Assembly: GCA_002269645.1 (NCBI GenBank)
Contig: NIVC01001723.1
Location: 25,844-89,843 of the forward strand
Length of the DNA: 64,000 nucleotides
Direction of reading: 5' to 3'
Source: Macrostomum lignano
Taxonomy: Eukaryota
Shown here: positions 1,227-35,279 of the stretch, piece by piece
Numbering within the stretch: the stretch's first letter is position 1
How the letters are laid out: each line of letters starts with the position of its first letter
Notes under the pieces: model-generated
What the model saw: only the letters and a program-made list of their open reading frames with translations
What the model was told of the DNA's origin: nothing
Databases searched by the model: none
Translations under genes and position numbers: made by a program

Positions 1227-2210
1227 ATGCGCGGCAATCATCAGAGTGCTGGGCCTGGTCGCAACTCTGCTAGTTACCATAGCAACCAGGGCAACAGAGA
1301 CGGCGTCAGTAACTACCATGGCAACGTAGCTGGCGTCAGTCGTTACCATGGTAACAAAGGTGGCGGTAATCGTTACTATGGCAACAGAGGCGGTGTCAGT
1401 GGATATCATGGCAACGGAGGCTTTGTTTCTCGTTACCATGGCAACCGAGGTGGCAGAATTTCATTGCCAAATTCTGACCAGGACAAGCGAAGCTTTCTGC
1501 AACAGCTCGGCTCCAGTGCCAACCCCACCAGCAGCAGTAGTTTCCATGGCAACCGAGCAGCTTCAAATCCAACGCAGGCGGAGACTGCGGCTGCGGCATA
1601 CGCAGATTTTAACTCCAATCGAATCTGGCAGCTGTTCGTTGAGAAACGTCAGACCGACGCCACCTACGCCAAGAAGCTGCTGCTGAGAGACACTCTACAG
1701 TCGATTGTGTCGCCGACATTTCAGTCGGCTGGCATTTTCATTGTCGGTTCGTCGCTGAACGGATTCGGCACGAATAGCACGGATCTGGATCTCTGCTTGA
1801 TGCTTACCAGTCAGGAGCTGCATCAGAAACGGGAGGCTGCGGCTGTGCTCACAATGATGCTTAAGCCGCTAAGGCAGTGCAGATTTCTCAACAGTGTCCA
1901 GCTGATTCACGCTAAGGTAAGCACATCGTTTAAAGTGCACAAACTCGAAATTTTACAGGATTGTGTCAAAACAGTTTGACTGTTTGTGTGTCGAATTTGA
2001 ATCGGATTTGTAAAATTGCAGCAACGCTTTCGAAGATCTAGTAAAAAATTGCACCTTTTTGGCAGTTCTTTGTACTTTTAGGTATCCTGCTTGAGTTTTG
2101 TAACTTTTAATTAGCCTAAAAAATTGTAGTGAGTTTAGGGTGGGAGGAAAATTTGGAGTCATTTGGCTGAGCGGTTTGGGAGTCCATAGCGAACAGGCAG
2201 ACAGACAGAC

Positions 2211-2286
<76 letters not shown>

Positions 2287-5200
2287 GAAGTTAAGCAAAT
2301 AAGCAGCATTAATTATACATGGAATTATTTATAGTTGAAAATGAAAGATGTTCGCCGAAGTGAAGCTAGTTAATCTCAAGGCCTCTACATTACAAAGCTG
2401 AACAGCTATACTCATTTGGCTCATTTACAGGTTTGAGGTTTTCAGCTAGTCAATCGATATTTTAAGTAAAAAATCACCCAATCTGGCACAGAAAAATGTA
2501 TAAGAACGCATAAATGTTAAGATACATTCGTTTTACTTGACACTACTAAAGAGGTTTTCTAGCTGAATTCGGAAATAACTTGAAGCTATAGCCAACACTA
2601 ATCGTATTTTAAAAAATTGACAAAAATTGGAGTACAGAGAATTTGTCAAGATTTAACAGTTTTATGAGCCATTTGAACCAATCACTGCTTTCGGAGCTTC
2701 TGTACTTCATTGAAGAATTTGCTCTTCAGCTTCAGAACTGGCCAGTCTTTCAGAGCCGGCTCATCCCGCTTGCTTAAGTTGCTGCAAGGCTTGCAGACCT
2801 GGCACCTTGCCTCCTGATTCTTCGAGCATCCTGGGAAAAGCGCGTCTGAATGCTGCCTCCTCTTCTGCTAACCAGTTAACATGCAACTGCTTCACTTTCT
2901 TCACAGAGTTGCCACTTCTTTTTATTTCAGCAGGAGGCTTATAAAGAAAGTCCTCACTTTCAGAATCAGTAGGCTTTAAGTGATAGAGGTGCGCTTAAGC
3001 CTTTAATGCAAGCTCATCGGATTGTTGCACTGGATTTTCGTTCTCCTTAAGTGATAGAGGTGCGCTTAAGCCTTTAGTGCGCAAAGATGATCAAGGTCAT
3101 CGGATTGTTGCACTGGATTTTCGTTCTCCTTAAGTGATAGAGGTGCGCTTAAGCCTTTAGTGCGCAAAGATGATCAAGGTCATCGGATTGTTGCACTGGA
3201 TTTTCGTTCTCCTTAAGTGATAGAGGTGCGCTTAAGCCTTTAGTGCGCAAAGATGATCAAGGTCATCGGATTGTTGCACTGGATTTTCGTTCTCCTTAAG
3301 TGATAGAGGTGTGCCAAGATGATCAAGCTCATCGGATTGTTGCACTGGATTTTCGTTCTCCTTAAGTGATAGAGGTGCGCAAAGATGATCAAGCTCGTCG
3401 GATTGTTGCACTGGATTTTCGTTCTCCTTAAGTGATAGAGGTGCGCAAAGATGATCAAGCTCGTCGGATTGTTGCACTGGATTTTCGTTCTCCTTAAGTG
3501 ATAGAGGTGCGCAAAGATGATCAAGCTCGTCGGATTGTTGCACTGGATTTTCGTTCTCCTTAAGTGATAGAGGTGCGCAAAGATGATCAAGCTCGTCGGA
3601 TTGTTGCACTGGATTTTCGTTCTCCTTAAGTGATAGAGGTGCGCAAAGATGATCAAGCTCGTCGGATTGTTGCACTGGATTTTCGTTCTCCTTAAGTGAT
3701 AGAGGTAAATATAAAAGAATGATAGAATGATAAAAGAATCCCTCCGATTCTTTTAAGTCGGCATCAGTGTCGTTAATCTTTATTTCTTCCAGCGTTTTGC
3801 CTTTCAGTTGCCCCAGCTTTCCTGCCTCGATCGCCAACATGAGTTTGCCCAACTCGATCGATCCGACCCAGCTCGATCGTTCTTATGTAAACGATAAAAA
3901 GTGTAATGCACCTTGATCATACATGCGCAACCTTGGGAATCACCCGGCCGTTTCTATTGGCAACACACACATGTAAGTCGCTATTGGCTGAGAGCAGTCA
4001 CGTGACTACTATTCCGTCCAATAGCGACTTACATGTGTGTGTTGCCAATAGAAACGGCCGAGTGAATCCCAAGGTTGCGCCCAAGCATGACCTTGATGCT
4101 ATGGTCCAGGTGCCTCGAAAGCCAGCCTAATTCATTCTCATTCAGCTCCAGCACTTGGGACGCAGTTGCAACATACTTTCGTAACTTTGTCGAAGTTAGT
4201 CACTCAGGATGCCTTAGCTCTTGGCAGGATGAGACAACGTTTTGAATGGCTTCAAAAAGAGACATGTACCACAGGCCATTCAGCTGACTAAAGACGTATT
4301 CGTTTTTTTCGGGACAAGGACGAGCGCTGATAAGACCATCAATTAGCAGACCGACTTCTGTAGGCACGAGTAGAGGCACAGGATTTTCCGCTCGCTTTCC
4401 ACGAACCTGTGGAAGTAACATTCGGTCTTTTATTTGTTATCACCGAGAACAGTTTGTGTCGTGTCGTCATTTTCATTTTGTTTGACCTTTTTGCGGCCTC
4501 CCAGTTCTGTAAAGTCAATCAAAAAGTTTCAGAAGGTCGTCTTCTATTAAAAATCATGAGTCGAACTGCAATAAGTTCAGCTGCCTTTTTCCATAATGCA
4601 GGCTCAGCCAAATCTTGAATTCTCTGCTCACTTAACGAGTGCTTGAGAAAGTATGTAATAGTCTTGATATCTTCCGTCAGAGGCAAAGTGTCATATTTGT
4701 CCGACTTTCTCTCCTTCAGTGTTAAAAGTGCAATGGTGGATACCTTTCGCTTCCAAATGCTTTCAAAGACAGATAGTTATAAAGTTACGTCTTTCCTCGA
4801 CTTTAGTGGGAAGATCAGCCTTTAAAGCGGAGACTAACGAAATTTCTGCAGCAGTTTTTAAATGAAAGCCTATTTTCAAAGCTATGGATGGAACGTCAAG
4901 CTATATGAAGTTGCATCTGTCTGCTTTCTAAAAAAACCTGCTACTTGCTTTGTCGCGACAACAAGATCATCGAAGTTTGCAGCAGTTAAAATATTCTCCA
5001 GATTAATTGACGGCTGACTCACACGTTTTCTGTGAGCAATTAATAAACGAGCAAGCTCCCTCATTTTGGTTGTTACTATTTATCAGTCTGTCTTTCCTGC
5101 TGTGTAGCTTTCGAACCATTTTTTCATCTTGGTTAATAAATCTTGATAGTCTTTAGGATATTGCGATGGAAGACAAAAAGAAAGTAGTAAGCAGCGACCT

Positions 5201-8200
5201 TGTGAGGCTGGATCTGACCGACACGTAGCTTCAGACACTGGTTTGTATCGGCAGCGGCTCCAGTGTCGGCTGATCTCTCGTCCGTCAAAAAATCCGAAGC
5301 AGTGTATGCTCGGAATGTAGTCATTCGAGTCTTCAGGTCTGCGACCATCGGTTCTTTCCCGGCAGACAATGATTCCTCCATCCTTCTCCTTCTTGAGTAC
5401 GGCAATGTTGTGAGCAAAGTCACCAAGAAGACGCAGTCTGTCCATTGCCATGTTGTAACCTGTAATAAGGAGGTGTATGGATTGACAGGATTAGGAAAGG
5501 AGGAAGATAGTCACTTCTTGTACTCGTATTTCCAGTGAATATTTTAACCCCTTAAAGTTGAAATTTACGAGCATTTACTTTCGAGAAAATATGCGTAATT
5601 TAATACAAAAGCATAATCATATATACATCGGAATTTAAGAGAACTATAGCAGCTAAAAAGACGTTTAGTTTATCTATATAGAAAACACAACGAGTCTTAA
5701 GAGCATGAATTACGCGACTGTTACCTGGTCAGTGAATCTTGTTTGTCAGACAGGAAAACAAACAAGATAACAAACAGGATAACACGATGTTTCCCTGCAG
5801 GATTCGCATGAATTACCCGACTGTTACCTGGTCAGTGAATCTTGTTTGTCAGACCTAGGATAACAAACAAGATAACAAACAGGATAACATGATGTTTCCC
5901 TGCAGGATTCGCATGAATTACCTGACTGTTACCTGATCAGTGAATCCTATTTGAATCTTGTTTGAAGCAAGGAAACGTAAGATTTCGTCTCGCAAACAGG
6001 ATTCATACAAGATAAACATTTTGCATAACCGGAATAGAGCATGTTATCTTGTTTGAGCGAATGTTATCTTGTGGTGTTATCTGGTTTATTTACCAGAGGG
6101 TTACCTTCAGAATTTGCTACATGTGAAAGAGCTCGCTGTACATCTAGTTCAGAGCCATGAACATGAGTAGTATGCCGACGGATTTTCGACAACAACTGGT
6201 TGCAGAAAAAAGCAGTTATGGCGCTTCTTCTCGAAAGAGCGAACTACTGGCTTCATAGCAGCCGGATACTCTTCATTACTGCAAGCATAAACAAAATCTT
6301 TTAGCGAAGGATGCAAATCACTATCGAAGTAAGACAATGGATGAAGCTCGATATCACTAAATCAATAATACTCTCAGCCTCTGAGACGTCAGCTACGCTA
6401 CATTCAGCCGTGAAGTATCCGTCCATACATTTTTCTGAAATTCTGCAATTAAAAAATGCCTCGGTATCACTATCATCTTCGTCCGTCGCATCCAAATCAA
6501 CCTTCTGCGTTCAACTACTGCAACAAGGACGAGATGGCGCACATCTAGCAGAAATGGGCGGACTTCGACGGGAATATGATGCGGCATTTCCACAATTAGC
6601 AACGAATTTCTAAGTCGGTCTTTGGTCATCAACGCCGCTCTTAGTCGGTCTCTGGCTATCAGAGCCGATCTTAGTCGGTCTCTGGCTATCAGAGCCGATC
6701 TTAGTCGGTCTCTGGCTATCAGAGCCGCTCTTAGTCGGTCTCTAACTATCAGAGCCGATCTTAGTCGGTCTCTGGCTATCAGCGCCGCTCCTAGTCGGTC
6801 TCTGGCTATCAGAGCCGCTCTTAGTCGGTCTCTGGCTATCAGAGCCGCTCTTAGTCGGTCTCTAACTATCAGCGCCGCTCCTAGTCGGTCTCTGGCTATC
6901 AGAGCCGCTCTTAGTCGGTCTCTGGCTATCAGAGCCGATCTTAGTCGGTTTCTGGCTATCAGAGCCGCTCTTAGTCGGTCTCTAACTATCAGAGCCGATC
7001 TTAGTCGGTCTCTGGCTATCAGAGCCGCTCTTAGTCGGTCTCTGGCTATCAGCGCCGATCTTAGTCGGTCGCCGTTTGTCAGAAAGATGTTTGGAGGCAA
7101 GCATACCGGACGCTTTCTTCATAAATTTCTCTTCACTAGTTCGTAGATTAATGGCTTTGAGCGCTTCGGCCTTGCTCACGTTTTTTACTGATCGAAATGG
7201 CAGTCTTCGGCTCAGCCTCAGCATCGTCTTGGAGATCCGAAGAGGCCGCTGCTACCATCGGGACCGTGACGTCGCTTGTCATCTATGGAGAAAGTACAGT
7301 TTGTCAGGGTTGTCAGTCAGAACGTGAACGCGTACATACATTGCTGGCAGCTTCGGAAGGGTTTAGGTGGACCCACCCTAACACTTTCTCTACCCATTTA
7401 GACTCATTAGACAACATACACTCCTTGACAGTGTAGAGAGGGTTTTGCTGGACTCACCCCAATACCCAGTTGGACTTATCAGTCAACATAGACTCTTTAC
7501 TGTAGAGAGGGTTTAGCTGGACCCACCCCAACACTTTTCTGAACCCATTTTCATTTATCAGCCAACATACACTCCTGACAGTGTATACAGGGTTTAGCTG
7601 GACCCACCCAACACTTTTCTAAACCCAGTTTCATTTATCAGCCAACATACACTCCTGACAGTGTATACAGGGTTTAGCTGGACCCACCCAACACTTTTCT
7701 AAACCCAGTTTCATTTATCAGCCAACATAAACTCCTGATAGTGTAGACAGGGTTTACATGTCTGTCTGTCTGTCTGTCTGTGGGTTCGGACCCACCCAAC
7801 ACTTTTCTAAACCCAGTTAGACTTGTCTGCTAACATATTCCTGACAGTGTAGAGAGGGCTTAGCTGCTAGAAATTCGCATTTTCCTACCTTTTTCTCGTT
7901 TTTTCCTTTGCAGCATTTTTTAAAGCATTTTTCTGTAAAGTTAATAAGGGTAGGTTTTGTGAGCGATTTTATAAATATCTTTAGCTTATAGATCCTTTAA
8001 ATGTGAAACAGAACTCACCACAAGTCGAGTGCTTAGATTGCAGTACTGCCGGGGGTATGTCTCTTTTCGGTTCCCAAGTATTGCTCATGCTAGAATATTA
8101 AATACTAGCTGTGATTTTTTACTTAAAACTGACTTATGAAATACACTTGCAATAGCAGAATAGTGATGCGTCTCGAAACTTACCTTGAATATCTCTTCCA

Positions 8201-10221
8201 CTTTACAAAGACCTTCTTTGCGGTGCACTTCACAATGCGCTCCACATAGTACGCTTTAGCCGTATTGGCGTGAATTTTTAAATTGCTGTTCGGCATTGCG
8301 TAGTTTGGAGCATACGCTGTACAATGATGTACCTACGTACAACAATAGGATATACTCAGTCTATGTAGCAGCTTTTGTAATCCAAGCGTATATTGGATAA
8401 ATAAGAAAAAGTATCAACACGAAGCCGATGCCAAGGAAGCATTGGGAAAATTGTCTTGTTTTTCTGGCTCTATTTATAAGATGGTTTATCTGGACCCCGA
8501 ATTAATTCTGCCTCATCTTTCTCCTGGACCAATAGGATTCGCTCGGGATGGTGTGGGTGAATGGGGGACTGCACATAAGGGAAGGGCCTGGCCTTAGCCC
8601 GTACATCTTCCACTCTTCAGTTTCGATTTGCTCGCCATGAGTGTATGTGGTTTAGCTGGACCCTAACTTTATTGAACCTTAAGAACCAGTAAAATCATTT
8701 GGGGAAGGGTTAGGGGTCAAGTTCGATGGAGTGGAGAGTTAGGTTTTAACACAAACCCTCAGTCATGTTGCTCTATATAGATATATACTCATATATATAT
8801 ATAGCATGTATGTATATATGTATTGATGTATACATGATGTATTGATGTATACATCAATATACGTATCTCGTAGACAGGATACGGAGTGAGTGATCTTGGT
8901 TTCCGTTCTCTTATTTGAATAGATAATTGAAGTTTTTGAAGGACACCATTCAAATCAGGAATAATCAGAAATAAGCTACGAATGGAGGCATCCCGTCCAG
9001 TAGCAACAATTAATGCTAATCCCCTATTTGACGCCAGCATGGCTAACAGCAACACATATTTCTAAACTATACATAAATTCTGCAGTTCCATTGATCTATA
9101 TTGGTTCTATAGCATAAAAATACTTTTCCCACGTTCTATTTCCAAAGCACTATATCACAAAAAAAATTTAATAAAACTTTATTTGACTTACAAAGTGTCT
9201 GTTAAACATACGCTTTGTATGTCTATTTTTATATGTCTTCGGGTTAAGTGGACCTCAGCCACGTAATTTACATAGACTATGTAAAAAGTCCACGTAAACT
9301 GAAATGCTTATAATTTCGATACGCTAATACTTCCAGTAGTAAATTTTCACACACAGTGTCAATACAATACAGAATCAACAAAAGAACTGAAAGCTTCGAA
9401 ACCTAGATTAAAAAAAAGAAAAAAAAGAAAGAACTGAAACCTAGATTATAAAATACGTGGATATCTTGCTGTTTTCAATACTACTCATAGTAATTATGAT
9501 ACTAATCAGCATTCTGTTAACGCACTTTCCCTGACTTCAGGTGCCAATTATTAAGTTTCGCGACACTGTCAGTCAACTAGACTGCGACCTGAACATCAAC
9601 AATCCCATCGGTATTTACAACACGCACCTCATGGCCGCATACGCCAAATGCGACTGGCGCGTCCGGCCCCTTGTGATGTTCGTGAAGCTGTGGGCGCAGT
9701 CGCTGGGGGTGCAGGACGCCAGTCAGGGCCGGCTGTCAAGCTACAGTCTGGCACTGATGACAGTGCAGTACCTGCAGGCTGGCTGCAGTCCCCCTGTGCT
9801 GTACAGTCTGCAGTCCTTGTATCCTCAGGTGTTCGACTACAACAGGCCGTACACAGAGATTGACATGCGAGTGCAGTTGCCATGGGAGGAGTTGAGGTCG
9901 CAGAACTGCCAGAATTTGGGCCAACTGTTTTCCGGATTCGTGCAGTACTATTCGGAATTCGACTGGCGCGGCTTCAGCGTGAGCGTGAGGCTGGGCAAGC
10001 CGCTGCCAATCCAGCTGGCATACAGACTGGTGCCTGCTCAAGAGCTGCAGGGTGCTATGAAATTTAAGATCTACATCGAGGAGCCGTTCTCCCTGACCAA
10101 CGCTGCCAGATCCGTCCACAGAGACGAAGTGTTCGCCCAGATTCAGCGAGCGTTTCGCGTCACCGCCCAGTCGTTGCGCAATCAGCGCAGCCTCTCCGAC
10201 ATCTTGAATAATCCAGTGTGA
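1227..10221 (+). CDS. GLD2: GLD-2/TENT2-type non-canonical poly(A) polymerase, copy 1; join(1227..1916,9541..10221), about 456 aa
   Basis: Has GSSLNGFG-x4-DLD, third Asp in LDCDLNINN, and DASQGRLSSYSL. The motif IEEPFSLTNAARSV has GLD-2 spacing, without the TUTase His insertion. Donor AAG|GTAAGC and acceptor TTCAG|GTG are both phase 0. Confidence 0.9.
1273..1553. promoter_or_regulatory. Cluster of RFX X-box-like palindromes inside the coding exon
   Basis: GTTACCATAGCAAC 1273, GTTACCATGGTAAC 1342, GTTACTATGGCAAC 1372, GTTACCATGGCAAC 1432 and GTTTCCATGGCAAC 1540 fit GTYNCY-AT-RGNAAC; partial sites at 1312 and 1402. Function is unproven. Confidence 0.4.
2194..2285. repeat. (GACA)n microsatellite
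   Basis: Direct reading; intronic. Confidence 0.95.
2973..3707. repeat. 66-bp tandem repeat (22-aa unit LSLKENENPVQQSDELDHLCAP) in the recombinase C-terminal region
   Basis: CTTAAGTGAT recurs at 3361 and 3427; open on the minus strand in ORF 3232..3852. Confidence 0.9.
3918..4089. mobile_element. 172-bp hairpin MITE, hAT-type (8-bp TSD)
   Basis: TSD ACCTTGAT at 3910-3917 and 4090-4097. Termini CAT...ATG with inverted arms of about 70 bp (3918-3987 vs 4018-4089). Removing it restores HSIKVHYTFY. Confidence 0.85.
5703..5960. repeat. About 104-bp tandem repeat, 2.5 copies, within an intron of the recombinase element
   Basis: GCATGAATTAC..ACTGTTACCTG recurs at about 5703, 5806 and 5910. Confidence 0.8.
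6625..7070. repeat. 30-bp tandem repeat, about 15 copies, inside the recombinase element
   Basis: AGAGCCGCTCTTAGTCGGTCTCTGGCTATC recurs every 30 bp; the repeat explains the overlapping ORFs on both strands. Confidence 0.95.
7365..7865. repeat. About 80-bp tandem repeat, about 6 copies
   Basis: GGGTTTAGCTGGACCCACCCAACAC at 7590 and 7670; lies in a predicted minus-strand intron. Confidence 0.85.
7889..8296 (-). CDS. Chromodomain-encoding exons: join(complement 8296..8184, 8089..8019, 7932..7889); probably the 5' end of the recombinase element gene
   Basis: Spliced translation MPNSNLKIHANTAKAYYVERIVKCTAKKVFVKWKRYS-S-MSNTWEPKRDIPPAVLQSKHSTC-E-KCFKKCCKGKNEKK. Donors GTAAGT, GTGAGT, GTAGGA; acceptors TTCTAG, TTACAG; phases 2/1/0 are consistent. 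Y-x-VE..VKW-x2-Y..NTWEP is the chromodomain signature. Confidence 0.8.
8471..8478 (-). promoter_or_regulatory. Possible TATA box for the chromodomain/recombinase gene
   Basis: TATAAATA on the minus strand about 175 bp upstream of the ATG at 8296, with a CCAAT near 8528. Motif match only. Confidence 0.25.
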
Positions 10222-10530: not shown

Positions 10531-11530
10531 TGACTCTCAGATTATTACTGCTGTGACTCTCAGATGCTTACTGCTGTGACTCTCAGATTATTACTGCTGT
10601 GACTCTCAGATTCTTACTGCTGTGACTCTCAGATTATTACTGCTGTGACTCTCAGATTCTTACTGCTGTGACTCTCAGATTATTACTGCTGTGACTCTCA
10701 GATTCTTACTGCTGTGACTCTCAGATTATTACTGCTGTGACTCTCAGATTATTACTGTTGTGACTCTCAGATTATTACTGTTGTGACTCTCAGATTATTA
10801 CTGTTGTGACTCTCAGATTCTTACTGCTGTGACTCTCAGATTATTACTGCTGTGACTCTCAGATTATTACTGCTGTGACTCTCAGATTATTACTGTTGTG
10901 ACTCTCAGATTATTACTGTTGTGACTCTCAGATTATTACTGCTGTGACTCTCAGATGCTTACTGCTGTGACTCTCAGATTATTACTGCTGTGACTCTCAG
11001 ATGCTTACTGCTGTGACTCTCAGATGCTTACTGCTGTGACTCTCAGATGCTTACTGCTGTGACTCTCAGATGCTTACTGTTGTGACCTGTGACTCTCAGA
11101 TGCTTACTGTTGTGACTCTTAGATGCTTACTGCTGTGACTCTCAGATGCTTACTGTTGTGACCTGTGACTCTCAGATGCTTACTGTTGTGACTCTCAGAT
11201 GCTTACTGCTGTGACTCTCAGATGATTACTGTTGTGACTCTCAGATGCTTACTGTTGTGACTCTCAGATTATTACTGTTGTGACTCTCAGATTATTACTG
11301 TTGTGACTCTCAGATTATTACTGCTGTGACTCTCAGATGCTTACTGCTGTGACTCTCATCTTTGATCTCTCAGATGCTTACTGTTGTGACTCTCAGATGC
11401 TTACTGCTGTGACTCTCAGATGCTTACTGTTGTGACCTGTGACTCAGATGCTTACTGCTGTGACTCTCAGATGATTACTGCTGTGACTCTCAGATGCTTA
11501 CTGCTGTGACTCTCAGATGCTTACTGTTGT
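10531..11530. repeat. 23-bp minisatellite, about 43 copies, between the two GLD-2 genes
   Basis: GTGACTCTCAGATTATTACTGCT with variants; period from 10576 and 10599. Confidence 0.95.
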
Positions 11531-11721: not shown

Positions 11722-14700
11722 ATGCAGGGCTACGAGCAGACGCTGGCGCTTAGCCATTACTACGCTTGGAACTCCTTGGCTGACCTGCTGGGCCGGCAGC
11801 CGACCATCACCACAGCTGGTAGCGGCGGCGGCGCCGGCGGAGCTCCTGGCAGCGGCGGCGCCGGATTCGGCGGCTTTGGCGGCGGCAACCGCCAGCGGCC
11901 GGGCCGGGGGGCATCGTTTGGCCGGTTCTACGGCGGCGGCGGGCCGAAACGCGGCGGCTTCGGGCCCGGCTTTGGCAGCGGCAGGCCCGGCGGCAGTTCT
12001 TTGCGATTCCACAGCGCCGGCGGAGGCGGCGCGAGACAGTCTATGGAAATACCGCCGCCGCCGCCGCCACCACCACCGCCTCAGCAGCAACCCAACGGGG
12101 TGAGTGTGGCGGCAGGCATAGCTGGATCCCATAGTCGATCGTTTTTATGCTTTTTCGCCAGCCTATTTGACCCACGAGACCACCATTGACCTTTATTTCA
12201 TCCACCGACCGTCTTTAACCTACGACCAAGGTCTTTGACCCACCATTTACGGTCTTTGACCCACCACCGACGGTTTCTGACTCACCACTGAGGTCTTTGA
12301 CCCACCGCCGACACTTTGACCCACCGCCGACACTTTGACCCACCGCCGACACTTTGACCCATTGCCGACACTTTGACCCACCGCCGACGGTTTCTGACTC
12401 GCCACTGAGGTCTTTGACCCACCGTCGACACTTTGACCCGCCACCGAATCTCTTTGACCCGCCACCGACACTTTGACCTGCCACCGACTCTCTTTGACCC
12501 ACCACCGATGCTTTGACCCGCCACCGACACTTTGACCCGGCACCGACACTTTGACTCGTCACCGACACTTTGACCCGCCACCGATGCTTTGACCCGCCAC
12601 CGACACTTTGACCCACCACCGATGCTTTGACCCGTCACCGACACTTTGACCCGCCGCCGATACTTTGACCCACCGCCGACTATCTTTGACCCATTGCCGA
12701 CACTTTGACCCGCCACTGATGCTTTGACCCGCCACCGACACTTTGACCCGCCACCGACTCTCTTTGACCCACCGCCGATACTTTGACCCACCACTGACTC
12801 TCTTTGACCCACCGCCGACACTTTGACCCATCACCGACATTTGGACCCACCATTGAGTTCTTTGACCCATCACCGTTACTTGGACCCACCATTGAGTTCT
12901 TTGACCCATCACCGACACTTTGACCCACCGCCGACACTTTGACCCATCGCCGACACTTTGATCCACAATTGAGCTCCTTAACCCACAGCTGACTCTCTTT
13001 GACCTGCCGCCGATACTTTGACCCACCACCGACACTTTGACCCACCACCGATGCTTTGACCCGCCACCGACACTTTGACCCGCCACCGACTCTTTGACCC
13101 GCCACCAACACTTAGACCCGCCACCGACACTTTGACCCAACACCGACTCTCTTTGACCCGCCACCGACACTTTGACCCACCACCGATGCTTTGACCCGCC
13201 ACCGACACTTTGACCCGCCACCGACACTTTGACTCGTCACCGACACTTTGACCCGCCACCGATGCTTTGACTCGCCACCGACACTTTGACCCACCACCGA
13301 TGCTTTGACCCGCCACCGACACTTTGACCCGCCACCGACACTTTGACCCATCGCCGACACTTTGATCCACAATTGAGTTCCTTAACCCACCGCTGACTCT
13401 CTTTGACCCGCCACCGACACTTTGACCCGCCACCAACACTTTGACCCGCCACCGACACTTTGACCTGCCACCGACTCTCTTTGACCCGCCACCGACACTT
13501 TGACCCGCCACCGACACTTTGACCTGTCACCGACTCTCTTTGACCCGCCGCCGATACTTTGACCCACCGCTGACTCTCTTTGACCCGCCACCGACACTTT
13601 GATCCTTTGATCCACCACCAGCACTTTGATCCACCACCGACACTTTGACCTGCCACTGACTCTCTTTGACCCGCCACCGATACTTTGACCCACCGCTGAC
13701 TCTCTTTGACCCGCCACCGACACTTTGATCCACCACCGACACTTTGACCCGCCACCGACACTTTGATCCACCACCGACACTTTGACCCGCCACCGACACT
13801 TTGATCCACCACCGACACTTTGACCCGCCACCGACACTTTGACCTGCCACCGACTCTCTTTGACCCGCCGCTGATACTTTGACCCACCGCTGACTCTCTT
13901 TGACCCGCCACCGACACTTTGATCCACCACCGACACTTTGACCCGCCACCGACACTTTGACCCGCCACCGACACTTTGACCTGCCACCGACTCTCTTTGA
14001 CCCGCCGCTGATACTTTGACCCACCGCTGACTCTCTTTGACCCGCCACCGACACTTTGATCCACCACCGACACTTTGATCCACCACCGACACTTTGACCG
14101 CCACCGACACTTTGACCCGCCACCGACACTTTGACCTGCCACCGACTCTCTTTGACCCGCCGCTGATACTTTGACCCACCGCTGACTCTCTTTGACCCGC
14201 CACCGACACTTTGATCCACCACCGACACTTTGACCCGCCACCGACACTTTGACCTGCCACCGACTCTCTTTGACCCGCCGCCGATACTTTGACCCACCAC
14301 CGATGCTTTGACCCGCCACCGACACTTTGATCCACCACCGACACTTTGACCGCCACCGACACTTTGATCCAAAATTGAGTTCATTAACCCACCGTCGACT
14401 CTATTTGACCCACCGCAGTTGCCTCCCCAGGCGCCCCAGCTGCCGCCGCCAGCTACCCTATCATCCTCGCCAGCGGATTCGATGGCGGCCTACGCCGAAT
14501 GGAACTCTGGCCGAATCTGGCAGCTATTTGTTGAGAAACGCCAAACCGACGCCACCTACGAGAGGAAGCTGATGCTCAGAGACGCCCTGCTGTCAGTTGT
14601 GTCCGCTTCGTTTCACTCGGCCGGCCTGTTTATTGTGGGCTCGTCTATGAATGGATTTGGCACCGATTGGGCCGACTTGGACCTGTGCCTGACCATCAAT

Positions 14701-17087: not shown

Positions 17088-17410
17088 TGACATCTCAATC
17101 ATCCCCCCTCCCTTAAGCCTTGACATCTCAGTCATTCCTCCTGTAAGCCTTGACATCTCAGTCATTCCTCCTGTAAGCCTTGACATCTCAGTCATTCCTC
17201 CCGTAAGCCTTGGCATCTCAACCATTCCCCCGTAAGCCTTGACATCTCAGTCATTCCCCCCCCCCTAAGCCTTGACATCTCAGTCATTTCCCCCCCCCTT
17301 AAGCCTTGACATCTCAGTCATTCCTCATGTAAGCCTTGACATCTCAACCAATTCTCCCTTAAGCCTTGACATCTCAGTCATCCCCCCCCCCCCCCCTAAG
17401 CCTTGACGTA
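17088..17410. repeat. About 31-bp degenerate tandem repeat upstream of PRPF38A; related inverted copies at about 34515-34605
   Basis: GCCTTGACATCTCAGTCATTCC units; reverse complement CTGAGATGTCAAGG near 34538. Confidence 0.8.
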
Positions 17411-19099: not shown

Positions 19100-19404
19100 T
19101 ATTATTATTTACTGCAGCTGCCCTGATGGCCAGATGAGCAACCGACAGCTCAGCCGCAGCTATTGCACGGCGTATCTGAAGGCTGCGTACGGCTGTTCAG
19201 TCCAAGGACTGGGGGGGGGGGTCGCCACACACAACCTCAATTACCCCAGCTAATGCTGGCACCCATTTTACAGCTGGGTGAACTGAAGCAGTGCAGAGTT
19301 AAGTGCCTTGCTCAAGGACACAAATTGTTCCAATGGGATCGGGAATCGAATCCCGACGTTTCAGTCGTGAGTCCGACGCTCTAACCACCATAGGCTACAA
19401 CTCC
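19100..19404 (-). mobile_element. tRNA-derived SINE, copy 1
   Basis: Reverse complement of the 26390 copy: tRNA-like head, CTTGAGCAAGGCACTTAACT...CACCCAGCTGTAAAATGGG central domain, AT-rich tail. Confidence 0.85.
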
Positions 19405-25520: not shown

Positions 25521-26389
25521 GCTGCTGCCCTGGAGCTGAGCAAGGTCTCCATGCGCCCTTGTGCTGCTCCGGAAAGCGAACCAAGAACACAGATGTCTGT
25601 AACGACTTTGCAACCTTTTATGTTTTTTTCCCGTTTACGTTTTGATGCTCCATTTGTGAAACTCGGAAACTGCTTGCTCTGTCTGATTTTTCCTGTCTCA
25701 TTCTGTCTGTTTTGCAAACTTGAAATCAGTGCTTTTTTGCGTTTACCGGAGTTAGTTTTTTAGTTAGAGGCGGGGGGCTGCAGCATGTGCACCCTGGCGC
25801 ACTTTAGGCGACATTGTCACACAACCGGCGAGAGGCATTGCTGCCCATTCCGCCGACTCCCCTGAGCAGGCATACAAGCGCGCGGATACGTACGCAGGCA
25901 CACACTCACACAGGAGTGTACAGCGGCCCTAACTTTATTTTATCGCTAGTTATGTACACTTCCCTGTGCCTTGGGGTTGGGCCTCAAAGCCGTTAATTGC
26001 ACGAGCAGAGCCAAGCCGAGATTCCAATTTAGCTCCAAATTAATGTGGCTGCACTTGGAATCGAGCCTGGGCCGCTGGTACATCAGAGCGCCGCGCCAGA
26101 CCACGGGGATATATTGTCTCTGTGTTTACCGTAAGCTACTGAAGGTAAATGAAAGAGGACAAATGCTACGTCACTTTTTGATACAACGGTTTTTTCTGTT
26201 GCTAATGCAAGTACAAAATCTTTTTAATAGTTTTTCTTTTCTCTGATCATTGTTACTCCTGCAGCTTGCTCTTGGGTAATACGGCTCGCAGTTAACCAAA
26301 TCAGTCAACCAAATATACTGTGTGATTGGAAGTTCTTTGCTGCTTAACCCTACCCCTAATTTCATTTCTATGGACTTTATTATTTCTAA

Positions 26390-26695
26390 AGGGGGTTGTA
26401 GCCTAGTGGTTAGAGCGTCTGAATCACGACTGAAAGGTCGGGGGTTCGATTCCCTATCCCACTCGGAATGATTTGTGTCCCTGAGCAAGACACCTAACTC
26501 TGCATTGCTTCAGTTCACCCAGCTGTAAAATGGGTGCCAGCATTAGCTGGGGTAATTGAGGCTGTGTGTGGCGACCCCCAGTCCTTGGACTGAACAGCCG
26601 TACGCAGCCTTCAGATGCGCCCAGCAATAACTGCGGCTGAGCTGTCGGTTGCACATCTGCCCATTAGGGCAGACGTAATCAATTAATATTATTAT
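26390..26695 (+). mobile_element. tRNA-derived SINE, copy 2 (full length)
   Basis: A box TAGCCTAGTGG (~26399), B box GGTTCGATTCC (~26443), CORE/V-like central domain, tail ending TAATATTATTATT. Confidence 0.9.
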
Positions 26696-27104
26696 TTTAT
26701 CTTGAAATTTATTTTTCTCAAAGGCTCATACGAGCTATCTCTTGAAAAGGATTAATTAGAAAAGCGGGTTTACCCACATGAGGTATGCTTGATTTGATTT
26801 TAAATGATTTGCGTAGATATTGTTCGAACCGTAAGTGAAGCCAGTAGGTCAACAATAAACTTCATACAATCCACAGCATATTCTAATCTATGCATTATCA
26901 TCAGCTTTATCTTCCCCACTAACAGTGACAAGTTCCGATTGGGAGCGAGCAACCAGTGAAAAACCACATGTCAATGTAATTAGACACTTTCTCGTTACTC
27001 ACAATATACAGTTAGCTTACTTTCCAACGAATACAGGGATGCGCATACATGTAGCTCATGTTTTTTAGTCTGCTGTCATCGCGGCACCTGACTCCGACCC
27101 TCGC

Positions 27105-27382
27105 CCCCACGTAATAATAATCGATAATTGATTACACCTGCCCCAATTTGGCCGGATGTGCAACTGACGGCTCAGCCGTAGCCAAGGACTGGGGGGGGGG
27201 GTCGCCACACACAGCCTCAATTACCCCAGCTAATGCTGGCGCCCATTTTACAGCTGGGTGAACTGAAGCAATGCAGAGTTAAGTGTCTTGCTCAAGGACA
27301 AATTGTTCCGAGTAAGGTAGGGAATCGAACCCCCGACCTTTAAGTCGTGAGTCTGACGCTCTAACTACTAGGCTACAGCCCC
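27105..27382 (-). mobile_element. tRNA-derived SINE, copy 3 (deletion in the 3' part)
   Basis: Same head and central domain on the minus strand; abuts the BEL/Pao fragment. Confidence 0.85.
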
Positions 27383-33316: not shown

Positions 33317-34442
33317 ACACACACACTGAGCAAAATGTTTAAGTTTCCACACTCCGAAACACTCTCAAATCTCAGCCCTAAGTTGACGCAATTGGCATCA
33401 CATCCGCGGTTTCTTGTCTCAACTGCGGGCGATGTTATTTGCGTCACAATGTCCCAGTTTAGGCTGGTGAGGATAGAGAGGAGAGCTATGGCTATGAGTT
33501 GGATTGAAGTTGTCTGCACTTTTCTGCTGTGGAAACTTTAACATGTAGCTGAGTGTTCTTTTTCTGGAATTTGGGGGGGGGCGACCCCCAATGTCCCCTC
33601 CATGTGATGGCTAAAATTTTGCTGTTGATGTGATGCGAGCAGTCACTCACAGACTGCACATAGGCCAGGTGATGAGCAGTGAGACAGAAAGCTAGATCGC
33701 AGTCTCTCAGTGGACACATTGTACACCCTATTGAACTGATCGTGAATAATGATGCTCAAATCAATGTCTAGTTTACTCCCTTCCATTAACGTTGTGTGTT
33801 GACTTTGGGGAGGGGGTGAGGGGAGGGGGTGAGGGGAGGGGGTGGGTTAATTTGAGTACTTGGATGTGATTGGCTGGGACTTGCGTATCTATGCCGGCCC
33901 ACCTAGAATGATGTGCGCATAAATAACCTTCTGAATGTGTTCGATTTTGCGAGCTATCTAAATTGAAATTCGAATTAATATTAATTACCTATATAGTTTT
34001 CAGGAATAGTTCTCAACTCATTTTTGGACTGCTAAATTGGTAAGTTTAAAACTTGAAGCTGCATCTCTATAAAGAGTTTTAATTATCTTCCAGACGATTT
34101 CGAGTTTTCGAGTTCAAGTTTGTTTCAAGTTTAAGTTATTTTAGTAGCAAAAACAGAGACAATTGTAAATAATATACGCATGCTCAGTAGTATAGAACGA
34201 AACTCTTCCGGCAAATTTTCACTTTCTGTAATTCATCAGTGGCGCTATATTATGTTAATTTTTTATTCTACTTACAATAGCATATGTCCTGTGCCTAAAT
34301 GGTTTTAAAAGCTGACTGTGTAGCAGTCTGTGTAACAGAGATGATTAAATAGATTCATAGAGCCAATGATGAGTCGAGCTGTGCCATGCATTTTTATGAA
34401 TTTTAGGTTCAGGAATTGTATGGAAAATAAAAAAATTAACAT

Positions 34443-34491
34443 AGGGTTAGGGTTAGGGTTAGGGTTAGAATTAGGGTTAGGCTAGGGTTAG
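34443..34491 (+). repeat. Short interstitial (TTAGGG)n-like tract
   Basis: AGGGTTAGGGTTAGGGTTAGGGTTAGAATTAGGGTTAGGCTAGGGTTAG. Confidence 0.8.
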
Positions 34492-35279
34492 AAAGTAGAC
34501 AGATTTTTTAAGATTTCAAGGCTTATGGGGGCATCGCTGAGATGTCAAGGGGGGAGTTGATATGTTAAGGCTTGTGGGGGGGAATTGCTGACATGTCAAG
34601 GCTTACAAGGGACTGCTGGGGTAAAATGCAACTTGTACTGCATTTTTTGGCACCCCAACGGGGGGCACTGATTGCTAGTTTTTGTGCTGAAAATGAAAAC
34701 TTCCTGTCTCCGTAGTGTCTTTTTCAGCTGAACAGTTCTAAGAAACTTATTTTCGCGTCTTTCTACTTGAGCAGTCCTTGGACTAGAATAGCACATGTTT
34801 TATAGCAGTTTGCAGCGTTGTGTCAATAACTAAAGTAATCTTTTTTGATGTTGCTAACAAATATAAAAATTAACATTACCCGACAAGATTAGAAAAGACT
34901 CACTGTATGAGGGTTAATAGGGTGTGAGGAGCATAGTATATATTTAAGTTAATGTTTCTGTACATGTCAATCATTTTTACAGAAACAGATCAGTTATTAC
35001 AATAAATTGGAGGGCATAGTTTGTTCATCAACATACTGGAGCATCATTTTTTTCTTTAACCAGCTAGATAAGTTAAAAATTCGATTTTAACAGATGAAAT
35101 GCTTGCATGAGATTTGTGTCTACTCTGAGGTTTGGGAGACAATTTGTCAGAAAAAATCCGTTTACTTTGAAAGCGTCGTTAGAAACCACGAGGACGAGCA
35201 GAACAGAGGCTGTAAAAGTTCAATCTGAAAAGGCTTGAACAGTCCTTGCGTGTAACCGTTGGCCCGTATTGTAAGACGT

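What the first reader, a model, noticed from the sequence alone, without database searches (positions are those of the whole stretch)
7889..8296. Hidden spliced chromodomain at the 5' end of the recombinase element: candidate chromatin-targeting Crypton
Seen: three small minus-strand exons absent from the ORF track splice with strong GT-AG sites and matching phases into AYYVERIV...VFVKWKRYSSMSNTWEPKRDI. A phase-0 acceptor at 7282 continues the gene, and one homopolymer correction near 7185 carries it towards the recombinase exons. Established: Y, W and Y at these positions form the methyl-lysine aromatic cage of HP1-type chromodomains, and chromovirus integrases use chromodomains for target selection. 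Inference: a chromodomain-YR fusion could steer a DNA transposon to methylated chromatin. I do not recall this architecture being described for Cryptons, but I cannot search to confirm. This is my best candidate for a novel system in the window.
Basis: partly seen in the sequence, partly recalled or inferred. Interest (0 to 1): 0.85.

Follow-up and report, generated by a model that had tools for sequence, protein, structure and literature searches.

The report
Chromodomain-bearing recombinase transposon, decayed copy
The three small exons do encode a histone-reader (chromo) domain at the front of a tyrosine-recombinase jumping gene; this copy is dead, but intact, RNA-supported relatives in the flatworm Macrostomum lignano show the fusion is real, which is uncommon but not unprecedented for a DNA transposon.

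Summary
Minus-strand exons 8296-8184, 8089-8019 and 7932-7889 splice GT-AG in frame into a 76-aa peptide. It passes Pfam Chromo (30.3 bits, cut-off 25.1) and keeps the aromatic cage (Y16, W33, Y36).

An annotated Macrostomum lignano protein (PAA76011.1, 1184 aa; UniProt "Chromo domain-containing protein") aligns with the window from 8260 to 2688. It has the same introns, the same exon 4 (start 7282) and the same recombinase. So the chromodomain is the N-terminus of one five-exon gene: chromodomain, linker, zinc fingers, tyrosine recombinase (YR), C-terminal tail.

Three M. lignano copies, 97-99% identical, lie in unrelated flanks with sharp ends bounded by (CTGT)n. This is a mobile, Crypton-like element. 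It carries no reverse transcriptase.

The window copy (about 2193-9375, antisense in an intron of a poly(A)-polymerase gene) is dead: many stops and frameshifts, and a MITE in the catalytic region.

Chromatin targeting is an untested inference. Among the 173 family proteins fetched here (the 150 best of about 5,800 representatives, plus earlier hits and cluster members), only this Macrostomum lineage carries the domain. A YR + zinc finger + chromodomain protein was already described for the fungal Enterprise/Starship captain Kirc. Verdict: a new variant of a known kind.

The parts
2193..9375 (-). Approximate extent of the decayed YR (Crypton-like) element. It lies antisense in the intron (1913-9540) of a Cid1/GLD-2-type poly(A) polymerase gene. 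The 3' end is fixed by the (CTGT)n run. The 5' end is only bracketed, between 9308 and 9540.
   Evidence: tblastn of P0022 covers 8260..2688. Conserved upstream block and (CTGT)n. Host exons.
9204..9308 (-). Conserved non-coding block about 1 kb upstream of the ATG. It is 76% identical to L007 9081-9186, which lies about 200 bp inside the 5' end of the M. lignano element.
   Evidence: sequences
8471..8478 (-). TATAAATA, a TATA-like box about 175 bp upstream of the ATG. This is a candidate promoter, inferred only.
   Evidence: sequence; a similar AAATAGAGGG stretch lies upstream of the M. lignano gene
8184..8296 (-). Exon 1: the ATG plus chromodomain strands beta1-beta2 (MPNSNLKIHANTAKAYYVERIVKCTAKKVFVKWKRYS + AG). 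The donor GT is at 8183-8182.
8019..8089 (-). Exon 2: the rest of the chromodomain (S)MSNTWEPKRDIPPAVLQSKHSTC + G.
7889..7932 (-). Exon 3: (E)KCFKKCCKGKNEKK, a short Cys/Lys-rich linker. EKCF is conserved with M. lignano.
7391..7756 (-). An 80-bp tandem repeat (about 4 copies) inside intron 3. It shares the motif GGTCCAGCTAAACCCT with the intron-3 repeat of the M. lignano copies.
6105..7282 (-). Exon 4 (decayed): MTSDVTVP..., a Ser/acidic linker with a 30-bp x15 in-frame repeat (RPTKSGSDSQ)n at 6609-7070, an acidic stretch, and the C2H2-like motif HNCFFCNQLLSKIRRHTTHVH. Restoring it needs at least 3 frameshift corrections (about 7185, 6330 and 6207). It also has 5 in-frame stops (6984, 6864, 6744, 6612, 6513).
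   Evidence: the M. lignano exon 4 is one continuous exon
5460..6104 (-). Intron 4 (donor GT 6104-6103, acceptor AG 5461-5460). It sits at the same codon as the M. lignano intron at residue 465 and contains a 105-bp repeat at 5703-5953.
2682..5459 (-). Exon 5 (decayed): a second Cys/His motif, the core-binding-like and catalytic YR domains, and the C-terminal tail with W-x-E-E-E (VNWLAEEEAAF). The stop is TGA at 2684-2682. It has several frameshifts and in-frame stops and a 19-aa deletion. 66/83-bp tandem repeats at 3009-3706 have expanded an APLSLKE motif.
3918..4089 (.). A 172-bp foldback (MITE-like) insertion flanked by the 8-bp direct repeat ATCAAGGT. It splits the catalytic region between HLDHSIKV and HYTFYRL.
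2193..2286 (-). (CTGT)n microsatellite (ACAG on the + strand, 23.5 units) at the 3' end of the element. The M. lignano copies have (CTGT)n at both ends.

Best explanation
SHOWN. The region 7889-8296 holds the first three coding exons of a single five-exon gene carried by a roughly 7-kb tyrosine-recombinase DNA transposon. It is Crypton-like in the broad sense: YR only, no reverse transcriptase. The gene encodes, from N to C:
- an HP1-type chromodomain;
- a repeat-prone Ser/acidic linker;
- two Cys/His zinc-finger-like motifs;
- a two-domain tyrosine recombinase;
- a C-terminal tail whose W-x-E-E-E motif loosely recalls Myb/SANT repeats (my reading of the sequence; no Pfam hit).

The window copy is an old, dead insertion, antisense in an intron of a poly(A)-polymerase gene. 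Intact sister copies (64% aa identity in the YR part) exist in Macrostomum lignano. There the fusion comes from an RNA-seq-derived gene model, and three 97-99% identical copies lie in unrelated flanks, bounded by (CTGT)n.

INFERRED.
- The recombinase excises the element as a circle and re-inserts it by site-specific recombination in (CTGT)n microsatellites. In the M. lignano copies, 13-bp inverted arms just inside each microsatellite would form a lox/FRT-like site on the circle.
- The chromodomain tethers the recombinase to methyl-lysine-marked nucleosomes and so biases which microsatellites are used, as chromodomains do for chromovirus integrases. I put this last step at about 0.4. The architecture itself I put at about 0.9.
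For: Chromodomain:
- Pfam Chromo scores above threshold on the spliced peptide and on P0022.
- The PDB sequence hits are chromodomains, and the HP1 cage positions Y24/W45/Y48 align with Y16/W33/Y36. M. lignano has F/W/Y at these positions.

One gene:
- P0022 (PAA76011.1) is 64% identical over 97% of the repaired YR and carries PF00385.
- tblastn maps it collinearly to window 8260..2688.
- Intron positions are identical for exons 1-3, and the intron at residue 465 matches too.
- The GenBank annotation of Mlig_3_7 derives from a genome-guided RNA-seq transcriptome (PMC5730564).

Selection:
- Between the window and M. lignano chromo exons, pN=0.34 while pS=0.75, which is saturated.
- Introns do not align, except for the shared repeat motif.

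Mobility:
- L007, L008 and L009 share identical ends and have no flank homology.
- All three contain the chromo exons.

YR identity:
- The AlphaFold model of P0002 has pLDDT 93.4.
- The only meaningful Foldseek PDB hits are XerA (prob 1.00).
- BFVD top hits are phage, nudivirus and hytrosavirus integrases and Vlf-1.
- R, K, R, H and Y are conserved, in the XerD catalytic register.

No reverse transcriptase: P0022-homologous exons plus short introns fill the element.

Microsatellite and arms.

Precedents:
- Crypton insertion by recombination with a short terminal motif has been observed (PMC9977147).
- YR-bearing elements insert into repeat motifs (PMC10871703).
- Chromodomain targeting is cited via Gao et al. 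2008.
Against: - No binding or insertion-site chromatin data exist.
- The chromodomain has a 4-5-residue shorter beta1-beta2 hairpin than HP1.
- The Pfam match covers only profile positions 5-40 of 53, so the C-terminal helix is not matched.
- The AlphaFold model of the domain was poor (pLDDT 54) and its Foldseek search gave nothing.
- The observed specificity, (CTGT)n, could be explained entirely by DNA recognition with no role for chromatin.
- The window copy has no clean 5' (CTGT)n and lacks the 13-bp arms.
- Sequence HMMs for YR families barely see this family: Phage_integrase E=1e-3 in 1 of 21 members, XerD E=0.03. DUF3504, the CryptonA signature, does not hit.
- The transcript evidence is a short-read assembly. 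The internal 1.2-1.3-kb amplifications make those gene models imperfect: P0022 contains a duplicated exon-4 segment, and the P0027 model spans 36 kb.
Confidence: 0.8

Rival explanations
1. The chromodomain is really part of the recombinase protein but does not steer integration. It could instead serve self-regulation, for example by finding the element's own heterochromatinised copies for excision. It could also support multimerisation of the synaptic complex, bind a non-histone methyl-lysine or nucleic acid, or be a decaying relic. Target choice would then be purely DNA-sequence driven, through (CTGT)n plus the arms.
For: All ends seen are (CTGT)n microsatellites with conserved 13-bp arms in M. 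lignano. That is enough for a lox-like mechanism. The hairpin is shortened and the C-terminal helix is unmatched. Among the 173 family proteins fetched here (the 150 best of about 5,800 representatives, plus earlier hits and cluster members), nearly all do without the domain.
Against: The cage residues and domain core are conserved between two lineages whose synonymous sites are saturated. This argues for a maintained ligand-binding function. In chromoviruses, fusion of a chromodomain to the integrating enzyme is the configuration that gives targeting (Gao et al. 2008, cited).
Confidence: 0.35
2. The Chromo-YR gene family is a domesticated host gene, like the Crypton-derived KCTD1/ZMYM genes. 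It would have been copied by genome duplication in Macrostomum rather than by transposition, and the window holds a dead paralogue.
For: The gene has introns, a promoter-like region and RNA-seq-based gene models, and it was not masked as a repeat in the M. lignano annotation. M. lignano has extensive recent duplication. Crypton domestication is well documented.
Against: The three copies share sharp boundaries at (CTGT)n and have no flank homology at E<1e-10. They sit inside or beside unrelated genes. The catalytic residues R, K, R, H and Y are intact in P0022, unlike in DUF3504 genes. The window copy lies in yet another locus and is decayed. Homologues are patchy across cnidarians, molluscs, beetles and metagenomes.
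Confidence: 0.07
3. The chromodomain exons belong to a separate small host or TE gene that merely lies upstream of the recombinase. The apparent fusion would be a gene-prediction artefact.
For: Exon 2 can also read through its donor to a stop (…STCGEFCFTFKGSIS*), giving a stand-alone peptide of about 75 aa. The window itself cannot prove splicing, because the downstream frame is broken.
Against: The same exon order, phases and exon-4 start are conserved in three M. lignano element copies, all inside the mobile unit's boundaries. The transcriptome-derived model joins them. No chromo exon was found anywhere else in the 64-kb window or in 136 kb of M. lignano loci.
Confidence: 0.03

Closest known systems
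Macrostomum lignano Mlig016835 genes (PAA76011.1 / PAA68901.1 / PAA73455.1; UniProt A0A267FQG6 'Chromo domain-containing protein')
   Same: Same domain order, same intron positions and the same intron-3 repeat motif. Identity is 64% in the YR part and 58-60% in the chromodomain. The element is nested in a host gene in L007, as in the window. A (CTGT)n run sits at the 3' end.
   Different: Those copies are intact, 97-99% identical to each other and RNA-supported. They have (CTGT)n on both sides plus 13-bp inverted arms. The window copy is a diverged, dead member of a sister lineage, possibly from another Macrostomum species; shared repeats are only 75-88% identical.
Animal Cryptons (CryptonA/CryptonI; Kojima and Jurka 2011, PMC3212892)
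   Same: DNA element with a YR as its only enzyme, no reverse transcriptase and no long terminal repeats. Found in cnidarians, molluscs and insects.
   Different: Described animal Cryptons have 'only YR (DUF3504)' as a recognisable domain, no C-terminal domain and no terminal repeats. This family does not hit DUF3504. It has zinc-finger motifs and a C-terminal tail, and in Macrostomum an N-terminal chromodomain and microsatellite flanks. Phylogenetic placement among Repbase Cryptons was not tested.
Enterprise/Starship captain Kirc (Vogan et al. 2021, PMC8092012)
   Same: A eukaryotic YR DNA-transposon protein that combines a tyrosine recombinase, a zinc finger and a chromodomain. Its authors proposed that the chromodomain may target specific genome regions.
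   Different: It is fungal and belongs to the DUF3435 family, with the chromodomain at the C-terminus, detected by HHpred. It mobilises giant cargo-carrying elements with a 6-bp RGGTAG repeat. Here the chromodomain is N-terminal, intron-split and Pfam-significant, in a compact 7-9 kb animal element. No DUF3435 hit was found. This is most likely an independent acquisition.
Chromoviruses (Ty3/Gypsy LTR retrotransposons with chromodomain integrases)
   Same: A chromodomain is fused to the enzyme that inserts the element. This is the model for chromatin-directed integration (Gao et al. 2008, as cited).
   Different: Chromoviruses are retroelements with a DDE integrase and a C-terminal, intron-less chromodomain. 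Here the enzyme is a tyrosine recombinase, the chromodomain is N-terminal, and the observed target sequence is a microsatellite.
HP1/CBX chromodomains
   Same: They are the best sequence matches in the PDB. The aromatic cage and the NTWEP motif are conserved.
   Different: The beta1-beta2 hairpin is shorter. There is no chromoshadow domain. The C-terminal helix is not matched. From my memory, the intron after KW(K/R)G(Y/W)S coincides with a conserved CBX intron, which would suggest exon capture from a host gene. This was not tested here.

Membership tests
Chromodomain (Pfam PF00385, HP1/Pc class) | Profile score above the curated gathering threshold | tested here: met
   30.3 bits (32.0 for the 41-aa core) against a cut-off of 25.1. 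P0022 scores 29.2 bits.
Chromodomain (Pfam PF00385, HP1/Pc class) | Three aromatic cage residues at the HP1 Y24/W45/Y48 positions | tested here: met
   The alignment to 1kna HP1 puts Y16, W33 and Y36 at these positions. M. lignano has F12, W28 and Y31. That these are the cage residues is established knowledge, not tested here.
Chromodomain (Pfam PF00385, HP1/Pc class) | Three-stranded beta sheet packed against a C-terminal helix | tested here: inconclusive
   The AlphaFold model from a 3-sequence alignment has pLDDT 54. Its secondary-structure order (E14-24, E29-37, E42-45, H51-55) fits, but Foldseek found nothing at E<=0.001.
Chromodomain (Pfam PF00385, HP1/Pc class) | Binding of methylated lysine (H3K9me/H3K27me) | not testable with these tools
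   Needs peptide-binding assays.
Tyrosine recombinase superfamily | Two-domain YR fold (core-binding plus catalytic) | tested here: met
   The P0002 model has pLDDT 93.4 and pTM 0.86. The top three PDB hits are XerA 5hxy, prob 1.00, E=2e-3 to 5e-3, and everything else is noise. In BFVD, at least 10 of the top 15 hits are integrases, XerC or Vlf-1.
Tyrosine recombinase superfamily | Catalytic R-K-H-x-x-R-H/W-Y residues | tested here: met
   R (NKRR-x-E), K (GKR), R (LRK), H (GH) and Y (FYRL) are invariant or nearly so in 21 and in 106 sequences. They align in register with XerD GKG.K / LRH / LGHS (the score itself is not significant). The first His of H-x-x-R is Thr in this family. The window copy keeps these residues, but its frame is broken and LGHS has become LDHS.
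Tyrosine recombinase superfamily | Significant hit to a curated YR sequence model (Phage_integrase, XerC/D) | tested here: not met
   The best hits are Phage_integrase E=1.1e-3 in 1 of 21 members and XerD E=0.031. The profile search against the PDB found only zinc-finger hits.
Crypton (YR DNA transposon, sensu Goodwin 2003 / Wicker 2007) | YR is the only mobility enzyme; no reverse transcriptase or RNase H | tested here: met
   P0022-homologous exons plus two short introns fill the window from 8296 to 2682. Only Chromo is found by Pfam in P0022. One gene lies within the L007 element.
Crypton (YR DNA transposon, sensu Goodwin 2003 / Wicker 2007) | [quoted passage not shown] | tested here: met
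   The M. lignano copies have (CTGT)n on both sides and only 13-bp subterminal inverted arms. In the window copy only the 3' (CTGT)n is recognisable.
Crypton (YR DNA transposon, sensu Goodwin 2003 / Wicker 2007) | Several copies at unrelated loci with common boundaries | tested here: met
   L007, L008 and L009 are 97-99% identical inside the element and have no flank homology. No second copy exists in the window.
CryptonA/CryptonI (Repbase groups) | YR recognisable as DUF3504 / clustering with reference Cryptons | tested here: not met
   No DUF3504 hit at E<=1 in 21 members. A phylogeny with Repbase references could not be run.
Starship/Enterprise captains | DUF3435-type YR | tested here: not met
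   No DUF3435 hit in any Pfam scan. The domain order also differs.
Chromatin-targeted transposons (works like a chromovirus) | Insertion bias towards histone-methylated chromatin that depends on the chromodomain | not testable with these tools
   Needs ChIP or CUT&Tag maps and insertion censuses in M. lignano.

The most novel reading that the evidence does not exclude
An animal Crypton-like DNA transposon lineage in macrostomid flatworms captured an HP1-type chromodomain, possibly as exons from a host CBX gene. It would use this domain together with a lox/FRT-like site, made of 13-bp inverted arms around a (CTGT)n spacer, to integrate into microsatellites lying in methyl-lysine-marked chromatin. 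That would be the first histone-reader-guided tyrosine-recombinase DNA transposon in animals. It would be convergent with chromoviruses and with fungal Starship captains, and it sits in a transgenesis-capable model organism.
Probability: 0.3. Interest if true: 0.75.

Novelty: new variant of a known kind. Interest (0 to 1): 0.6.

Why it matters
Chromodomain-guided integration is well established only for LTR retrotransposons. The element here suggests that a tyrosine-recombinase DNA transposon in an animal acquired a histone reader independently. The only comparable report is an HHpred-level annotation in fungal Starships. If so, reading chromatin would be a recurrent solution for very different integration chemistries.

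The system is unusually testable:
- M. lignano has intact, nearly identical copies.
- It has a chromo-less sister family that can serve as a natural control.
- It has transgenesis and inbred lines.

The microsatellite-flanked ends with inverted arms also give a concrete candidate recombination site for a very large, unmodelled metazoan YR family. That family has about 5,800 representative proteins and no Pfam model. A defined site could interest the field of site-specific recombinase tools.

For this particular window, the practical message is more modest. It holds a dead copy in an intron of a poly(A)-polymerase gene.

Tried and rejected
- Searching the 5.8-billion-protein index with the 76-aa peptide alone found no candidate sharing three 5-mers. 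That search was wasted. The homologue came only from the profile search with the YR alignment.
- The first YR search returned 20 homologues, none with a chromodomain. On its own this would have wrongly suggested there was no fusion.
- The neighbourhoods of more distant homologues (P0001, P0003, P0004; loci L001-L006) contain no chromo exons.
- AlphaFold on the chromodomain with a 3-sequence alignment gave pLDDT 54, and the Foldseek search on it gave no usable match. I draw no structural conclusion from it.
- The profile of the YR family against PDB sequences gave only weak zinc-finger hits. PHROGs and NCBIfam gave nothing useful.
- I tried to identify the source organism by exact look-up of two long window ORFs, and both failed. 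The assignment to Macrostomum or a close relative rests on the best protein hits and on shared repeats of 75-88% identity.
- I looked for inverted terminal arms in the window copy like those in M. lignano and found only chance 8-mers.
- I considered and rejected a chromoviral integrase fragment: there is no rve or RVT, the domain is N-terminal, and it is intron-split.
- I considered and rejected a DIRS/Ngaro retroelement: there is no room for a reverse transcriptase.

Full report
OBSERVATION.

On the minus strand the sequence shows an ATG at 8296 and three small exons: 8296-8184, 8089-8019 and 7932-7889. All have canonical GT-AG borders and compatible phases (2, 1, 0). Together they give 76 codons without a stop: MPNSNLKIHANTAKAYYVERIVKCTAKKVFVKWKRYS|SMSNTWEPKRDIPPAVLQSKHSTC|EKCFKKCCKGKNEKK. 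A phase-0 acceptor at 7282 opens ATGACAAGC… (MTSDVTVP…).

The peptide passes Pfam Chromo: 30.3 bits, E=4e-7, gathering score 25.1. The match runs across the exon 1/2 junction. Against PDB sequences, 49 of the 50 hits are named chromodomain proteins, with HP1/CBX5 among the best. The alignment to HP1 (1kna) places Y16, W33 and Y36 at the Y24/W45/Y48 cage positions. Compared with HP1, the beta1-beta2 hairpin is 4-5 residues shorter, and the C-terminal helix is not covered by the profile.

WHAT LIES DOWNSTREAM.

Three-frame translation of 8400-3600 shows a broken gene of a family with conserved motifs: NRRRPSE, VRGKR…VPLLV, TSTKLRKYVAT and HL(G/D)HS…VH…FYRL.

A first homology search with a repaired translation returned 20 proteins of 375-833 aa. 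They came from a soft coral, a scallop, beetles and metagenomes, at 23-45% identity. None had a Pfam domain or a chromodomain.

The alignment revealed the family layout:
- a variable acidic or basic N-terminus;
- a C-x2-C…H-x4-H motif;
- a second C-x2-C…H…C motif;
- the recombinase;
- sometimes a C-terminal W-x-x-E-E tail.

The first zinc-finger motif is present in the window at about 6225-6150, across a frameshift. An intron from 6104 to 5460 joins it to MAMDRLRLLGDF….

THE DECISIVE HOMOLOGUE.

A profile search with that alignment found P0022, which is Macrostomum lignano PAA76011.1 (BOX15_Mlig016835g4). It is 1184 aa long, 64% identical over 97% of the repaired recombinase, carries a precomputed PF00385, and is named 'Chromo domain-containing protein' in UniProt. 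Its N-terminus compares with the window as follows:
- P0022: MQKKKPQASRRFYVERIIKCTKKKLYIKWKGYSSNQNSWEPRSNIPTSVIQSLHSSCEKCFPPNEQQKTMT|MGSDVTIPQAEGSS…
- Window: …AYYVERIVKCTAKKVFVKWKRYSSMSNTWEPKRDIPPAVLQSKHSTCEKCF…|MTSDVTVPMVAAASS…

tblastn maps P0022 collinearly onto the window from 8260 down to 2688.

In the M. lignano locus (L007) the introns interrupt the chromodomain at exactly the same codons. These are after YS+AG, after SSC+G, and after exon 3. Intron 3 carries a tandem repeat with the same GGTCCAGCTAAACCCT motif as window 7391-7756. Exon 4 starts with ATGGGCAGCGAC. The next intron falls at residue 465, as in window 6104→5460.

The M. lignano GenBank annotation derives from a genome-guided RNA-seq transcriptome, from which repeat-overlapping transcripts had been removed (PMC5730564). 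So the fusion rests on transcript evidence, although from short reads.

Between the two lineages the chromo exons have pN=0.34 against a saturated pS=0.75. The introns are unalignable. The domain has therefore been maintained by selection.

IT IS A MOBILE ELEMENT.

The cluster of P0022 has members on three contigs. Loci L007, L008 and L009 are 97-99% identical inside common, sharp boundaries and share no flank homology. All three start (CTGT)n-GT-TAGTGTATGTGTG-TTTGCGTAGACTC… and end …GTAAC-CACACATACACTA-GTATGT-(CTGT)n. That is a microsatellite on both sides, with a perfect 13-bp inverted repeat just inside each end. All three carry the chromo exons.

L007's copy lies inside an Ank/ARM gene. 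The window copy lies antisense in an intron of a Cid1/GLD-2-type poly(A) polymerase. That gene's MTPAP-like palm domain is split 3-104 / 105-138 by the intron 1913-9540.

In the window the element ends in (CTGT)n at 2286-2193. This abuts another repeat family (2192-1943), which in M. lignano itself begins with (CTGT)n. That fits insertion into a pre-existing microsatellite.

A conserved 106-bp block at 9308-9204 marks the 5' region. A clean 5' microsatellite and the arms are not recognisable in the window. There is no room for a reverse transcriptase.

IS THE ENZYME A TYROSINE RECOMBINASE?

Curated sequence models barely see it. A 106-sequence alignment gave a confident AlphaFold model of P0002, with pLDDT 93.4.

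The only meaningful PDB matches are the XerA recombinase (prob 1.00). In BFVD the top matches are phage integrases, XerC, hytrosavirus and nudivirus integrases and Vlf-1.

R, K, R, H and Y are conserved in the expected order. They fall in the XerD register (the score itself is not significant).

By the broad definition (a DNA element defined by a YR; quoting Wicker 2007) this is a Crypton. It does not meet the DUF3504 signature of CryptonA. Its place among the Repbase groups is untested.

STATE OF THE WINDOW COPY.

The copy is dead.
- Exon 4 needs at least three frame corrections (about 7185, 6330 and 6207). It has five in-frame stops (6984, 6864, 6744, 6612, 6513), three of them inside a 30-bp x15 repeat.
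- Exon 5 has several frameshifts and stops and a 19-aa deletion. 66/83-bp repeats have expanded an APLSLKE motif.
- A 172-bp foldback insertion at 3918-4089, with an 8-bp direct repeat (ATCAAGGT), lies between HLDHSIKV and HYTFYRL.
- The chromo exons being intact is unremarkable for 76 codons.

HOW WIDESPREAD IS THE FUSION?

An exhaustive phmmer search with P0022 found 5,839 representative proteins at E<=1e-3. I scanned the 150 best, plus earlier hits and cluster members (173 proteins in all), with an HMM built from seven canonical chromodomains. Only P0022 and P0027 were positive.

The M. lignano sister family at 50% identity (P0023/P0024, locus L010) has no chromo exon in 27 kb. So the domain is a lineage-specific gain shared by the window's sub-family and Mlig016835. 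The remaining roughly 5,700 representatives were not scanned.

MECHANISM.

Shown: the architecture, the splice structure, mobility, the microsatellite flanks, and the inverted arms in M. lignano.

Inferred:
- Excision to a circle brings the two arms together around a (CTGT)n spacer. That is a lox/FRT-like site, and the recombinase exchanges it with genomic (CTGT)n.
- This follows the Goodwin model, which was recently observed for CryptonF-1_cRei (terminal CACCG, target CAYCG; PMC9977147). It also resembles YR-bearing endogenous nimaviruses that insert into repeat motifs (PMC10871703).
- The chromodomain would add a chromatin filter by tethering the enzyme to methyl-lysine nucleosomes, as in chromoviruses.

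I rate this last step at about 0.4. Sequence-only targeting with another role for the domain is the main rival.

NOVELTY.

Kojima and Jurka (2011) state that the only recognisable domain of animal Cryptons is the YR, and that these elements lack C-terminal domains and terminal repeats. My full-text searches found no description of a chromodomain in an animal Crypton or in Macrostomum elements.

However, Vogan et al. (2021) annotated the fungal Enterprise captain Kirc as YR + Zn finger + C-terminal chromodomain and suggested targeting. UniProt already flags the M. lignano protein automatically.

Hence this is a new variant of a known kind. It is interesting mainly because it is a convergent, Pfam-significant, intron-bearing animal case in a tractable model.

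Noticed in passing
window 1227-~1912 and 9541-10221 (+): Two exons of a Cid1/GLD-2-type non-canonical poly(A) polymerase. The MTPAP-like_central domain is split at profile positions 104/105, with PAP_assoc in the second exon. The 7.6-kb intron between them is almost entirely the YR element plus one other repeat.
   Followed up: partly
window 3918-4089: A 172-bp foldback (arms 3925-3987 / 4018-4080, 97% complementary) flanked by the 8-bp direct repeat ATCAAGGT (4097-4090 and 3917-3910). It looks like a MITE with an 8-bp target-site duplication, inserted in the recombinase catalytic region.
   Followed up: partly
L007 8868-8882 and 17635-17647 (also L008, L009): Perfect 13-bp inverted arms, TAGTGTATGTGTG / CACACATACACTA, lie 2 bp and 6 bp inside the flanking (CTGT)n runs of all three M. 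lignano copies. On a circular intermediate they would flank a (CTGT)n spacer like a lox/FRT site. They are not found in the window copy.
   Followed up: partly
window 1943-2192; L007 24803-25116: A second repeat family directly abuts the element's 3' (CTGT)n. Its M. lignano relative (76% identical) itself starts with a (CTGT)n run, so it may have supplied the microsatellite target.
   Followed up: partly
L008 10001-46224; L007 10548-13596; L009 3446-13600: Inside the M. lignano elements, a unit of about 1.2-1.3 kb (the intron-3 repeat plus the start of exon 4) is tandemly amplified, to about 30 kb in L008. The chromo exons are duplicated once in L008. This distorts the annotated gene models: P0022 has a duplicated MGSDVTIPQ segment, and the P0027 model spans 36 kb.
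   Followed up: partly
window 6609-7070 and 3009-3706: Tandem repeats lie inside coding exons and in frame: a 30-bp x15 repeat (RPTKSGSDSQ) in exon 4, and 66-bp x7 and 83-bp x3.7 repeats (LSLKENENPVQQSDELDHLCAP) in exon 5. The second set grew from a single APLSLKE motif present in the M. lignano protein.
   Followed up: partly
protein family of P0001-P0173: This YR family is very large (5,839 representatives at E<=1e-3, 954 at E<=1e-30) and occurs across animals and metagenomes. Yet no Pfam, NCBIfam or PHROGs model recognises it. Some members are 2,400-4,600 aa with up to 10 matched stretches.
   Followed up: partly
window 10531-11530 and 12295-13991: Large tandem arrays sit just beyond the host exon: 23/46/69-bp units (about 35 copies) and a 19-bp unit (about 87 copies, with strong GC skew). 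Their function and origin were not examined.
   Followed up: no
window 17088-17387, 19115-19401, 25895-27380, 34314-34611, 62814-63608: Other interspersed repeats are shared with the M. lignano loci at 75-88% identity. This is consistent with a Macrostomum or closely related source genome. The source organism was not identified.
   Followed up: partly
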